From the NCBI RefSeq assembly GCF_006345805.1, contig NW_021824662.1:1-35754 (forward strand): a DNA stretch of 35,754 nucleotides. Reading direction: 5' to 3'. This DNA comes from Octopus sinensis. Taxonomy: Eukaryota. Position numbers and translations under genes: made by a program. Shown in pieces: positions 4,284 to 5,764 of this stretch (the stretch's first letter is position 1; every line of letters starts with the position of its first letter). The notes beneath the pieces were generated by a model. It was not told the DNA's origin and searched no databases. It saw only the letters and a program-made list of their open reading frames with translations.

Positions 4284-4459
4284 ACCCTTAGGGTTAGCCA
4301 TATTGAAATGGCAAAAATACGTCACGATGTGTTACCGCTACTGTATATAACTCACTTTGATATTTATATCATTGTTTGATTTCACTTTTCAATATCAGCG
4401 ACAGTGGGCGCTGGAAAAAGTATAAGTATTTGTGAGGAAATCTAATTCTCGGCGACAAC

Positions 4460-4518
4460 TATGATTGTCACCCGCTGACGAGAGGTCATACCTCGAAACT
4501 CGAGTCCGTGTGTATCAT
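4460..4518 (+). ncRNA. Type I hammerhead ribozyme, copy 1
   Basis: TATGAT-TGT-CACCCG-CTGACGA-GAGGT-CAT-ACCTC-GAAA-CTCGAG-TC^CGTGTG-T-ATCATA. Predicted cleavage 4506/4507. It has one stem I mismatch and a 3-nt loop II relative to copies 2 and 3. Confidence 0.8.
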
Positions 4519-4803
4519 AAGTTGAAGACGGGAAGGATGACTTCCCTTTGCAAATACTGACAGGACCCAGAAAGTGTGTCTATGGCCAGCTGGAGGAGTG
4601 TGTCCTCCTGGGGCTAAAACTACAGTAGCATCCACCCTTAGGGGTTAGCCATATTGAAATGGCAAAAATACGTCACGATGTTTACCGCTACTGTATATAA
4701 CTCTTTGATATTTATCATTGTTTGATCTCACTTTCAATATCAGCGACAGTGGCGCTGGAAAAAGTATAAGTATTTGTGAGGAAATCTAATTCTCGGCGAC
4801 AAC

Positions 4804-4865
4804 TATGATTGTCACACGCTGACGAGAGGTCAATACCTCGAAACTCGAGTCCGTGTGTATCATAA
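4804..4865 (+). ncRNA. Type I hammerhead ribozyme, copy 2
   Basis: CACACG/CGTGTG perfect 6-bp stem I extended by TATGAT/ATCATA, CTGACGA core, GAGGT-CAAT-ACCTC stem II, GAAA, ACTCGAGT palindromic stem III. GUC cleavage predicted at 4851/4852. Confidence 0.92.
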
Positions 4866-5151
4866 GTTGAAGACGGGAAGGATGACTTCCCTTTGCAAAT
4901 ACTGACAGGACCAGAAAGTGTGTCTATGGCCACTGGAGGAGTGTGTCCTCCTGGGCTAAAAACTACGTAGCATCCACCCTTAGGGGTTAGCCATATTGAA
5001 ATGGCAAAAATACGTCACGATGTGTTACCGCTACTGTATATAACTCACTTTGATATTTATCATTGTTTGATTTCACTTTTTCAATATCAGCGACAGTGGG
5101 CGCTGGAAAAAGTATAAGTATTTGTGAAGGAAATCTAATTCTCGCGACAAC

Positions 5152-5212
5152 TATGATTGTCACACGCTGACGAGAGGTCAATACCTCGAAACTCGAGTCC
5201 GTGTGTATCATA
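5152..5212 (+). ncRNA. Type I hammerhead ribozyme, copy 3
   Basis: Same sequence as copy 2. Predicted cleavage 5199/5200. Confidence 0.92.
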
Positions 5213-5764
5213 AGTTGAAGACGGAAGGATGACTTCCCTTTGCAAATACTGACAGGACACAGAAAGTGTGTCTATGGCCAGCTGGAGGAGTGTGTCCTCC
5301 TGGGGCTAAAAACTTACAGTAGCATCCACCCTTAGGGGTTAGCCATATTGAAATGGCAAAAATACGTCACTATATATATATAGGTATATATATATAAATG
5401 TAAACATACATACATTCCTAACCATTCCAAAGTGATATTTGCACAGTGAGCAGTCTGTGCATGTGTATATGTATATACATATATGTTTGTTCGATATGGA
5501 ATAATGTATTTGAGAACAATACTACTTCCAACTAAATCATGAAGAATGAATAAGCAAATATCAAACTCCAAATATGATAAATCATTAAAAAAATATCAAA
5601 CTCGAAAATAAACGACTTTTTGCATCATTATATATTTAAAAGCAAAGCTGTTCCTTATTTAAACGAATAGTGTATGTAGAAATATTATGTTATAATATAA
5701 TATAATATACTATAATATAATATAAAATATTATAATATGATATCATGATAACGCTTTCAAATTT

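What the first reader, a model, noticed from the sequence alone, without database searches (positions are those of the whole stretch)
4284..5370. Tandem hammerhead-ribozyme array: a candidate cephalopod non-LTR retrozyme / circRNA system
Seen: three near-identical non-coding ~350-bp units, each with a complete type I hammerhead (stem I CACACG/CGTGTG plus TATGAT/ATCATA, CUGACGA, 5-bp stem II with CAAU loop, GAAA, GUC site). Each unit also has other hairpins (GGGAAG/CTTCCC, GGAGGA/TCCTCC, GCCAT/ATGGC). Cleavage at 4506, 4851 and 5199 would release monomers of 345 and 348 nt. Established: metazoan non-LTR retrozymes are tandem repeats of a few hundred nt with type I hammerheads that yield circular RNAs. 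Inference: this is such an element, and I cannot tell whether this family or lineage is already described.
Basis: partly seen in the sequence, partly recalled or inferred. Interest (0 to 1): 0.92.

Follow-up and report, generated by a model that had tools for sequence, protein, structure and literature searches.

The report
Octopus hammerhead-ribozyme retrozyme tandem array
A short tandem repeat in an octopus-like genome carries a self-cleaving hammerhead ribozyme in each ~348-bp unit and fits the known animal "non-LTR retrozyme" class of small parasitic elements that make circular RNAs, so it is a new example of a known kind.

Summary
Window 4284-5370 is a 3.1-copy tandem array of a ~348-bp non-coding unit. 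Each unit has a canonical type I hammerhead with the stated cleavage sites (4506, 4851, 5199). There are two corrections. Copy 1 has a helix I mismatch (CACCCG) and a CAU loop. All three copies score just below Rfam's gathering cut-off (32.2, 32.2 and 25.3 bits against 34), so the default Rfam scan reports nothing.

Every sequence-level feature of metazoan non-LTR retrozymes (Cervera & de la Peña 2020) that I could test is met. Transposon homologies place the window in an octopod.

New anatomy points to mobilisation by a Penelope-like element (PLE). The array sits in a (TA)n microsatellite and has a 43-nt terminal redundancy like the PLE "tail". A second, diverged head-to-head insertion lies at 20252-20513, also in (TA)n. 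One arm of it ends at the same unit position as the array. Its other arm starts 0-4 nt from the predicted cleavage site. A PLE remnant lies 19 kb away.

RNA cleavage, circularisation and mobility are all inferred. No related copies could be reached in any searchable collection. I found no open-access description of cephalopod retrozymes. Verdict: a new member of a known kind, of moderate interest.

The parts
4284..5370 (+). Retrozyme array: three full ~348-bp units plus a 43-nt partial fourth unit (terminal redundancy, or 'tail')
   Evidence: TRF: period 348, 3.1 copies, 95% matches. Alignment A1. nhmmer hits.
4469..4512 (+). Hammerhead copy 1. The core is intact, but helix I has a mismatch (CACCCG) and loop 2 is shortened (CAU). 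Predicted cleavage after 4506.
   Evidence: Rfam RF00163 at 25.3 bits, E = 0.0016. Sequence. Fails the strict descriptor.
4813..4857 (+). Hammerhead copy 2, a canonical type I HHR: helix I 6 bp plus an outer 6 bp (4804-4809 with 4859-4864), helix II 5 bp with a CAAU loop, helix III 2 bp with a UCGA loop. Cleavage after C4851.
   Evidence: Rfam RF00163 at 32.2 bits (gathering score 34), E = 8.1e-6. Strict descriptor.
5161..5205 (+). Hammerhead copy 3, identical in sequence to copy 2. Cleavage after C5199.
   Evidence: Rfam RF00163 at 32.2 bits, E = 8.1e-6. Strict descriptor.
4852..5199 (+). Predicted 348-nt monomer RNA, cleavage site to cleavage site. The other monomer is 4507-4851 (345 nt).
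   Evidence: Linear MFE -112.3 kcal/mol, z = -5.0, with all three HHR helices formed in the MFE. Circular MFE -107.2 kcal/mol with 63% of bases paired.
5328..5370 (+). 43-nt terminal redundancy (unit positions 1-43, ending ...ATACGTCAC), abutting (TA)n. Comparable to the 30-40 bp 'tail' of PLE insertions.
   Evidence: Literature on the tail: PMC8557442 and PMC11167929.
3840..4283 (.). TA-rich microsatellite forming the left flank of the array. The right flank, 5371-5398, is also (TA)n.
   Evidence: TRF period 2. Sequence.
20252..20442 (-). Second, diverged insertion, direct arm. It covers unit positions ~223 (0-4 nt from the predicted cleavage site) through 351/1 to ~87. It has no hammerhead and carries a ~19-nt deletion of the GGGAAG hairpin. 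It ends in (TA)n(TG)n.
   Evidence: blastn at 77-80% identity. Local alignment. nhmmer E = 4e-58, though that model was built from an alignment that includes this arm, so this E-value is not independent. Sequence.
20443..20513 (+). Second insertion, inverted arm. It covers unit positions 324 to 43 and is 86% identical to the consensus. It lies head-to-head with the direct arm. Its outer end (...ATACCTTCAC) falls at the same unit position as the 3' end of the array and abuts (AT)25.
   Evidence: Inverted repeat I1, 64 nt, 92% complementary. Alignments.
24180..25964 (+). PLE remnant and candidate class of autonomous partner. It has RT fragments, a CX4CX2C linker and a GIY-YIG endonuclease, is broken by two in-frame stops, and appears 5'-truncated. 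No sequence similarity to the retrozyme unit was found.
   Evidence: Pfam RVT_1 and GIY-YIG weak hits. 102 homologues carrying RVT_1, HTH_animal and GIY-YIG domains. No blastn similarity to the unit. No HHR found there.

Best explanation
This is a short genomic array of a non-autonomous, non-LTR retrozyme in an octopod genome.

Proposed life cycle:
1. The array is transcribed into a multimeric RNA.
2. The type I hammerhead in each unit cuts after GUC (C4851, C5199). It may act alone, since it has a 2-bp helix III with a tetraloop like the coral and mussel ribozymes that cleave as single motifs. It may also act as a double hammerhead through the 8-nt palindrome ACUCGAGU.
3. [quoted passage not shown]
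4. The monomers fold into a compact, highly paired structure and are ligated by a host RtcB-type ligase into circular RNA.
5. Processed RNA, either circular or linear, is copied by the reverse transcriptase of an autonomous PLE.
6. The PLE's GIY-YIG endonuclease inserts the copy at (TA)n microsatellites. A circular or multimeric template gives tandem copies.

Shown here: the repeat, the ribozyme anatomy, non-coding status, base composition, predicted fold stability, the insertion-site anatomy, and the presence of a PLE.

Inferred from the literature on the family: transcription, cleavage, circularisation, and the identity of the mobilising enzyme.
For: - Array and units.
- Hammerhead core and helices match the 'canonical metazoan type I' description in PMC4209133: helix I 6 bp, helix II 4 bp, helix III 1-2 bp with a 2-4 nt palindromic loop.
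- The motif is far above chance.
- GC is 43% and there is no conserved ORF.
- Monomer folds give z = -5.0 and -3.6, and the HHR helices form in the MFE. Circular folds have 61-63% of bases paired.
- A cofold of two HHR segments adopts the double-hammerhead arrangement with an 8-bp intermolecular helix III: -53.1 kcal/mol against 2 x -24.2.
- Insertion anatomy is consistent with PLE machinery. Both insertions lie inside (TA)n, and runs of (TA) of at least 4 repeats cover only 5.2% of the window.
- The 43-nt terminal redundancy resembles the 30-40 bp PLE tail. That tail is explained by two adjacent internal RT start sites (PMC11167929; PMC8557442).
- The inverted arm of the second insertion ends at the same unit position as the array. 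This has roughly a 1% chance per independent end.
- The head-to-head arrangement resembles the inverted 5'-truncated copies typical of PLEs.
- The direct arm begins 0-4 nt from the predicted cleavage site. This has a chance of roughly 1.5-2.6%.
- A PLE with a CX4CX2C linker lies in the same window. That linker type has been proposed to mediate microsatellite targeting.
- The units are nearly identical, with 1-2 substitutions per pair. This fits a recent single-event origin.
Against: - No hammerhead copy reaches Rfam's gathering score.
- One of the three ribozymes is impaired as assembled.
- Only three near-identical HHR copies exist, so there is no covariation support for any helix.
- No related copy could be retrieved from any searchable collection, nor from about 90 kb of other cephalopod or mollusc loci. 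Copy number and distribution are therefore unknown.
- The window's PLE shares no sequence with the unit and has no detectable HHR, so no specific partner is identified.
- In the only PLE studied in vitro, HHR cleavage was not needed for insertion, and no reads began or ended at its presumptive HHR cleavage site in public RNA-seq data.
- The end-position coincidences were noticed after the fact and rest on a single second insertion.
- The isolated 73-nt HHR segment prefers a non-catalytic fold (-24.2 against -14.2 kcal/mol).
Confidence: 0.8

Rival explanations
1. The array is a dead or silent relic: a small minisatellite that once derived from a hammerhead-bearing element but is no longer transcribed, cleaved or mobile. 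Its tandem structure arose by local duplication or unequal crossing-over, not by reverse transcription of a circle.
For: There are only 3.1 copies. Copy 1's HHR is impaired. No other intact copy was found in the window or in about 90 kb of related loci. A partial terminal unit is expected for any tandem array.
Against: The units differ by only 1-2 substitutions, and two ribozymes are fully intact, so the array is young. A second independent insertion shares the same terminal position and the same (TA)n target, which local duplication does not explain.
Confidence: 0.12
2. The repeat is not a separate non-autonomous family. It is a tandem run of pseudo-LTRs left by an autonomous PLE whose ORF has been deleted or was never copied.
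For: PLE pLTRs carry type I hammerheads and form tandem or partial-tandem and inverted structures with a 30-40 bp tail. A 2026 preprint finds that vertebrate retrozymes are sister to PLE pLTRs. A PLE remnant is in the window.
Against: There is no RT or endonuclease ORF between or next to the units. The unit has no similarity to the window's PLE, or to the PLE loci fetched from O. vulgaris, O. bimaculoides and A. hians and from two unidentified ENA assemblies. The ribozyme is the canonical form with helix III and a 4-5 bp helix II. It is not the minimal PLE variant, which has no helix III and a 7-8 bp helix II.
Confidence: 0.06
3. The triplication, or its copy number, is an assembly artefact. 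The genome holds a monomer or a different number of units.
For: Differences between units are dominated by 1-2 nt indels in homopolymers. This is typical of uncorrected long-read assemblies, and tandem repeats are prone to mis-assembly.
Against: The units are not identical. They carry distinct substitutions (T/C at unit ~98, A/C in helix I). The array has clean junctions with unique TA-rich flanks on both sides. Even a dimer would satisfy the retrozyme definition.
Confidence: 0.05
4. The hammerhead resemblance is a chance motif in a repeat with no ribozyme function.
For: Scores are below Rfam's gathering cut-off.
Against: All 13 invariant core positions are present, along with the G10.1-C11.1 and A15.1-U16.1 pairs, three helices of canonical length and the palindromic loop 3. 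The strict descriptor finds 2 motifs against 0.003 expected, with E = 8e-6. The motif also lies in exactly the genomic context, a tandem unit of a few hundred bp, where such ribozymes are known.
Confidence: 0.01

Closest known systems
Metazoan non-LTR retrozymes (Cervera & de la Peña, NAR 2020, PMC7229834), especially the Mytilus galloprovincialis repeats of ~350-390 bp
   Same: A type I hammerhead in every unit of a short non-coding tandem repeat, with the same unit size class, low GC and a highly self-paired monomer. Like the mussel, the host is a mollusc, and PLEs are present in the genome. Helix III of 2 bp with a tetraloop matches the form described for invertebrates.
   Different: The unit shows no detectable similarity to anything I could search, and these families are reported to be species-specific. 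The host is a cephalopod, and I found no open-access description of retrozymes in that group. Expression as circRNA is untested here. Loop 2 (UCAAUA) resembles the archetypal CAAAUA, whereas the mussel ribozymes lack most of the archetypal loop-loop nucleotides.
Newt satellite 2 and axolotl HHR_Amex1/Amex2 repeats (330/350 bp)
   Same: A type I hammerhead in ~330-350 bp tandem units. A short helix III capped by a palindromic tetraloop allows a double-hammerhead (dimeric) active form.
   Different: The amphibian repeats reach up to ~120,000 copies and form large arrays, whereas this is a 3-unit interspersed array. HHR_Amex1 has a 1-bp helix III, whereas this one has 2 bp (like Amex2 and the invertebrate forms) and may therefore cleave as a single motif.
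[quoted passage not shown] 2024, PMC11167929)
   Same: Type I topology and tandem or inverted insertion structures. A terminal 'tail' of a few tens of bp. Insertion into microsatellites.
   Different: PLE ribozymes are minimal variants, with no helix III, helix II of 7-8 bp and helix I of 4-5 bp, and they flank a ~3-kb RT-endonuclease ORF. Here the ribozyme is canonical and there is no ORF.
Plant LTR retrozymes (Cervera et al. 2016, PMC4918200)
   Same: A non-autonomous element whose hammerheads excise a monomer that circularises and serves as a retrotransposition intermediate.
   Different: The plant elements have type III hammerheads inside ~350-bp LTRs, a PBS and PPT, 4-bp TSDs and GC above 55%, and are mobilised by Gypsy elements. 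None of these features is present here.
Schistosoma Sm-alpha SINE-like hammerhead elements
   Same: A canonical type I hammerhead with a closely similar loop 2 and core. This is the sequence type that dominates the Rfam RF00163 consensus aligned.
   Different: By my recollection of the literature (not checked here), Sm-alpha is described as a SINE-like, tRNA-related element. No tRNA-like region is found in this unit (no tRNA hit).

Membership tests
Hammerhead ribozyme, type I (Rfam RF00163) | Conserved catalytic core C3-U4-G5-A6-N7-G8-A9 ... G12-A13-A14 ... H17, with G10.1-C11.1 and A15.1-U16.1 pairs | tested here: met
   CTGACGA / G...C closing helix II / GAAA / ...GTC is present in all three copies.
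Hammerhead ribozyme, type I (Rfam RF00163) | Three helices around the core, with helix I open (type I topology) | tested here: met
   Copies 2 and 3 have helix I of 6 bp (plus an outer 6 bp beyond an internal loop), helix II of 5 bp and helix III of 2 bp with a UCGA loop. Copy 1 has a C-U mismatch at the third pair of helix I and fails the strict descriptor.
Hammerhead ribozyme, type I (Rfam RF00163) | Score at or above Rfam's curated gathering threshold (34 bits) | tested here: not met
   Scores are 32.2, 32.2 and 25.3 bits. There is no hit at gathering threshold. The E-value of 8e-6 in the local search remains significant.
Hammerhead ribozyme, type I (Rfam RF00163) | Compensatory base changes supporting the helices | tested here: inconclusive
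   Only three near-identical copies exist. The one diverged relative in the window lacks the ribozyme. No outside copies could be retrieved.
Hammerhead ribozyme, type I (Rfam RF00163) | Site-specific self-cleavage | not testable with these tools
   Needs in vitro transcription with core-mutant controls.
Metazoan non-LTR retrozyme | Type I HHR within short tandem repeats (150-450 bp units, from dimers to multimers) | tested here: met
   A 348-bp unit in 3.1 copies, with an HHR in each. Definition.
Metazoan non-LTR retrozyme | Non-coding, with no LTR architecture | tested here: met
   No ORF is shared between units, and the longest stop-free stretch in the consensus is 65 codons. The structure is a plain head-to-tail repeat. 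PBS and PPT motifs were not searched for specifically.
Metazoan non-LTR retrozyme | Low GC content (<45-50%) | tested here: met
   The array has 42.9% GC, against 35.6% for the window.
Metazoan non-LTR retrozyme | Monomer RNA predicted to be stable and highly self-paired, with the HHR free to fold | tested here: met
   z = -5.0 and -3.6 against shuffles, with helices I-III present in the linear MFE. Circular folds have 61-63% of bases paired. The minus strand also folds well (z = -4.4), so part of the signal is strand-symmetric.
Metazoan non-LTR retrozyme | Co-occurrence with autonomous PLEs in the genome | tested here: met
   An RT + GIY-YIG remnant lies at 24180-25964. It is degenerate, so an active partner has not been shown.
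Metazoan non-LTR retrozyme | Dispersed multi-copy family (evidence of transposition) | tested here: inconclusive
   One additional diverged insertion lies at 20252-20513.
Metazoan non-LTR retrozyme | Abundant monomeric linear and circular RNAs in tissues | not testable with these tools
   No transcriptome data are available here.
Autonomous Penelope-like element (pLTR array) | RT-GIY-YIG ORF flanked by the repeats; minimal HHR variant | tested here: not met
   There is no ORF in or next to the array. The HHR is canonical, not minimal. The unit has no similarity to any PLE locus examined.
Plant-type LTR retrozyme | Type III HHR inside LTRs, PBS/PPT, GC >55% | tested here: not met
   Type I topology, 43% GC, no LTRs.
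Viroid-like or HDV-like circular RNA replicon (integrated copy) | Ribozymes in both polarities, or a delta-antigen-like ORF | tested here: not met
   No ribozyme hit appears on the minus strand at E <= 10, there is no minus-strand HHR motif, and there is no ORF.

The most novel reading that the evidence does not exclude
The two insertions in this window may record how animal retrozymes are mobilised. The retrozyme ends carry the PLE-specific signature: a ~40-nt 'tail' between two fixed internal reverse-transcription start sites (unit positions 1 and 43), head-to-head two-ended priming, and (TA)n microsatellite targets. One copy's 5' end also sits at the hammerhead cleavage site. Together these would be sequence-level evidence that ribozyme-processed retrozyme RNA is copied and inserted by a PLE reverse transcriptase/GIY-YIG endonuclease. 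The link has so far been argued from co-occurrence and from pLTR sequence similarity. The 2026 preprint on the PLE origin of retrozymes does not mention tails.
Probability: 0.3. Interest if true: 0.55.

Novelty: new member of a known kind. Interest (0 to 1): 0.36.

Why it matters
Non-LTR retrozymes are an established class that is still little studied. They are tiny parasitic repeats that turn host transcription into abundant ribozyme-made circular RNAs. A cephalopod family would extend the catalogue to a lineage known for unusual RNA biology and very repeat-rich genomes.

The copies here score just under Rfam's cut-off. Counts such as the 235 Hammerhead_1 hits reported for the giant squid may therefore miss whole families.

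The more useful point is mechanistic. If the shared end positions, the 43-nt tail and the (TA)n targets hold genome-wide, they give a testable sequence-level link between retrozymes and the internal-initiation mechanism recently shown for a PLE in vitro.

Tried and rejected
1. The default Rfam scan of the whole window found nothing. The hammerheads appear only with the E-value threshold.

2. Searches for outside copies by DNA pattern all returned zero hits. I tried the HHR pattern, the conserved tail hairpin and the cleavage-site junction against metagenome contigs and viral contigs. These collections hold little or no cephalopod DNA, so the negatives say nothing about copy number.

3. I tried a protein route to eukaryotic assemblies. 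This used translations of the longest stop-free segment from each of the six reading frames of the consensus as queries, hoping that ORF callers had called spurious genes on related copies. There were no hits.

4. I searched five PLE-containing loci for the unit or for hammerheads: L001, L002 (A. hians), L003 (O. vulgaris), L004 (O. bimaculoides) and L005. L001 and L005 come from unidentified ENA assemblies. All five were checked by blastn and nhmmer and by my strict descriptor. Rfam was run only on L003-L005. No copy of the unit was found. The only motif was one HHR-like sequence beside a PLE in L005, which Rfam did not support.

5. I looked for a hammerhead, or similarity to the unit, in the window's own PLE and its flanks. 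None was found, so this PLE cannot be named as the partner.

6. I tested whether the 'tail' region is more conserved than the rest between the two subfamilies. It is not clearly so: 79% identity there against 73-83% in neighbouring segments.

7. The TTAGGG-like telomeric motif at the unit start is not conserved in the second insertion (TTAAGGG). I dropped it as a chance resemblance.

8. The miRNA and snoRNA hits around the array all lie on TA/TG microsatellites and are artefacts.

9. No TSD can be called, because both flanks are (TA)n.
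Full report
**1. The observation**

Window 4284-5370 is a head-to-tail repeat of period 348, with 3.1 copies and 95% matches. I set the units at 4284-4635, 4636-4977 and 4978-5327, with a 43-nt partial fourth unit at 5328-5370.

Each unit contains the full hammerhead (HHR) core. In copy 2 the parts are:
- Outer stem I: TATGAT 4804-4809 pairs with ATCATA 4859-4864.
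- Inner stem I: CACACG 4813-4818 pairs with CGTGTG 4852-4857.
- Core: CUGACGA 4819-4825.
- Stem II: GAGGU/ACCUC with a CAAU loop.
- G12-A13-A14 followed by A15.1.
- Helix III: A-C[UCGA]G-U.
- C17 at 4851.

The GUC ends fall at 4506, 4851 and 5199.

A strict structural descriptor finds two motifs in the window, against 0.003 expected from 300 dinucleotide shuffles.

**2. Corrections to the observation**

- Copy 1 has CACCCG in stem I, which puts a C-U mismatch at the third pair, and a CAU loop. It fails the strict descriptor and scores 25.3 bits.
Hammerhead_1 (RF00163) scores 32.2 bits for copies 2 and 3, against a gathering score of 34, with E = 8e-6 in the 1.25-kb search. The default scan of the window therefore returns nothing.
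- The units differ by only 1-2 substitutions but 11-13 short indels per pair, most of them in homopolymers. That ratio is typical of noisy long-read assembly rather than of evolution. The true units are probably almost identical, and the exact lengths are uncertain by a few bases.

**3. What kind of ribozyme it is**

The architecture matches what Cervera & de la Peña (2014, PMC4209133) call the canonical metazoan type I hammerhead. That form has helix I of 6 bp, helix II of 4 bp, and helix III of 1-2 bp capped by a 2-4 nt palindromic loop. Loop 2 here (UCAAUA) aligns with the Rfam consensus CAAAUA.

ACUCGAGU is a perfect 8-nt palindrome. A cofold of two 73-nt hammerhead segments adopts the double-hammerhead arrangement with an 8-bp intermolecular helix III. 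Its energy is -53.1 kcal/mol, against 2 x -24.2 for two separate monomers.

Coral and mussel retrozyme constructs carrying one hammerhead cleave on their own, and invertebrate hammerheads are described as having 2 bp plus a tetraloop. I therefore regard both single and dimeric cleavage as possible.

No ribozyme is detected on the minus strand.

**4. What the repeat is**

- The unit is non-coding.
- It has 43% GC.
- It has no tRNA-like part.
- The 348-nt and 345-nt monomers fold with z = -5.0 and -3.6 against shuffles. The three hammerhead helices are present in the minimum-energy structures, and helix I extends into a long closing stem.
- Folded as circles, 61-63% of bases are paired.

These are the features by which Cervera & de la Peña (2020, PMC7229834) define metazoan non-LTR retrozymes. 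Their definition is type I hammerheads in tandem units of 150-450 bp, no LTR/PBS/PPT, low GC, highly self-paired circRNAs, and co-existence with Penelope-like elements (PLEs). Their mussel family has ~350-390 bp units.

**5. Host**

The window holds no recognisable host gene, but it is full of transposons. The 330-aa ORF at 24972-25964 has 102 homologues carrying RVT_1, HTH_animal and GIY-YIG domains. The best named ones come from Argonauta hians, Octopus vulgaris and O. bimaculoides.

At the DNA level, the window's PLE is 69% identical over 1.7 kb to one on O. vulgaris chromosome OX597819.1. A ~400-bp SINE-like family in the window is up to 93% identical to copies at that O. vulgaris locus. 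Matches to an O. bimaculoides locus are weaker, and there are none to two unidentified ENA assemblies.

The source is therefore an octopod, probably close to O. vulgaris. The species was not determined.

**6. New anatomy bearing on the mechanism**

(a) The array sits inside a TA-rich microsatellite (3840-4283 on the left, 5371-5398 on the right).

(b) The array runs from unit position 1 (ACCCTTAGGG) through three full units to unit position 43 (...ATACGTCAC). It therefore has a 43-nt terminal redundancy.

(c) blastn and nhmmer reveal a second, diverged insertion at 20252-20513. It also lies between (TA)n runs. It consists of two arms lying head-to-head.
- The inverted arm (+ strand, 20443-20513) covers unit positions 324 to 43 and is 86% identical to the consensus.
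- The direct arm (- strand, 20442 to 20252) covers unit positions ~223 to ~87. It is about 71-80% identical and carries a ~19-nt deletion.
- Neither arm contains the hammerhead.

(d) The outer end of the inverted arm (...GGCAAATATACCTTCAC|ATAT) falls at the same unit position as the array's 3' end (...GGCAAAAATACGTCAC|TATA).

(e) The direct arm's inner end begins xGTGTGTATCAT, which is 0-4 nt from the predicted cleavage site.

(f) A PLE remnant with a CX4CX2C linker before its GIY-YIG domain lies at 24180-25964.

**7. Reading of this anatomy**

PLE insertions are described as tandem or partial-tandem, often with an adjacent inverted 5'-truncated copy. They show a bias for microsatellite targets and carry an optional 30-40 bp 'tail' at one end (Craig et al. 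2021, PMC8557442).

Frangieh et al. (2024, PMC11167929) showed in vitro that a PLE reverse transcriptase starts at two adjacent internal sites on its RNA. The tail is the sequence between those two sites.

The retrozyme array fits this pattern: whole units plus a 43-nt tail, in (TA)n. The second insertion looks like two-ended priming, with both 3' ends facing outward. One of those ends uses the same start site as the array. The direct arm's 5' end is where a self-cleaved RNA would end.

The chance that an independent end falls within about 1 nt of the same unit position is about 1%. The chance that another end falls within 0-4 nt of the cleavage site is about 1.5-2.6%. The chance that two insertions both land in (TA)n, which covers about 5% of the window, is about 0.3%.

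These figures were calculated after the fact and rest on a single extra insertion. I treat the PLE-mobilisation reading as plausible, not shown.

Points against it:
- The window's PLE shares no sequence with the unit and has no detectable hammerhead.
- In the Anolis system, hammerhead cleavage was dispensable for insertion in vitro.

**8. Comparison with the known, and novelty**

The element behaves like, and passes every sequence-level test for, a metazoan non-LTR retrozyme. It fails the tests for the following:
- An autonomous PLE pLTR array: no ORF, and a canonical rather than minimal hammerhead.
- A plant LTR retrozyme: type I, not type III, and no LTRs.
- A viroid-like or HDV-like replicon: single polarity, and no ORF.

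No tRNA-like head is present either, so it does not look like a tRNA-derived SINE.

In the searchable literature I found no description of retrozymes in cephalopods. The only mention is a count of 235 Rfam Hammerhead_1 hits in the giant squid genome. The 2026 preprint on the PLE origin of retrozymes covers vertebrates and does not discuss tails.

I therefore rate it as a new member of a known kind. The insertion-site anatomy is the only part that might add something new.

**9. Limits**

No collection available here holds cephalopod genomes in a DNA-searchable form. DNA-pattern scans and a protein-translation route found no related copies. About 90 kb of fetched cephalopod or mollusc loci contained none either.

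Copy number, phylogenetic spread, covariation and expression therefore remain open. All RNA-level steps are inferred from what is established for the family.

Noticed in passing
window 20252-20513: A second, diverged retrozyme insertion that lacks the hammerhead. It has two head-to-head arms joined 0-4 nt from the predicted cleavage site and is flanked by (CA)n(TA)n and (AT)25. One outer end coincides with the 3' end position of the main array.
   Followed up: yes
window 23957-26649: A Penelope-like element remnant at 24180-25964, with RT pieces, a CGRPNCGIC linker and GIY-YIG, and in-frame stops at 24657 and 24966. It is bracketed by a ~185-bp inverted repeat (23957-24139 and 26466-26649, 89-96% complementary). 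24118-24170 repeats an internal RT-region peptide (DMLNHLPNT). (TTC)n lies at 26102-26308. It is probably a rearranged or inverted PLE insertion.
   Followed up: partly
window 8994-9397, 16205-16672, 27520-27910, 28374-28761, 32385-32786, 35359-35754 and others; tandem at 14904-15509: A ~400-bp SINE-like family with many copies in the window, up to 93% identical to copies on Octopus vulgaris OX597819.1 (L003). A 219-bp, 2.7-copy tandem made of tRNA-like SINE heads lies at 14904-15509.
   Followed up: partly
window 4284-5370 (unit-to-unit differences): Indels outnumber substitutions about 6-13 to 1 between the units, mostly in homopolymers. This suggests that the assembly carries uncorrected long-read errors, which would also affect ORF calls elsewhere in the window.
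   Followed up: partly
window 4205-4291, 5347-5427, 22048-22173, 26869-26941: Rfam 'miRNA', 'snoRNA' and 'RUF' matches (mir-297, mir-1277, mir-466, mir-3149 and others) all fall on TA/TG microsatellites, score well below their gathering cut-offs, and are artefacts.
   Followed up: yes
window 1700-2035, 6333-6689, 7878-8600: Other transposon debris: a LINE-type endonuclease fragment (Exo_endo_phos_2, weak), a Tc1/mariner-type DDE_3 transposase fragment, and ORFs that look RT-like by eye but have no Pfam hit. No host gene was recognised in the window.
   Followed up: partly
L005 7457-7488 (ENA ERZ25069866, contig ctg4408): A hammerhead-like motif (GGTCA-CTGATGA-GGCTTTAATAGTC-GAAA-CCACGGT-A-TGGCC) lies about 500 bp from an inverted PLE ORF in an unidentified assembly. 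Rfam does not support it at E <= 1.
   Followed up: partly
window 4284-4300 and each unit start: The unit start, CCACCCTTAGGGGTTAG, contains a TTAGGG-like telomeric motif. In the diverged copy it reads ACCCTTAAGGGT, a perfect 12-nt palindrome. This is probably a small hairpin rather than a telomeric relic.
   Followed up: partly
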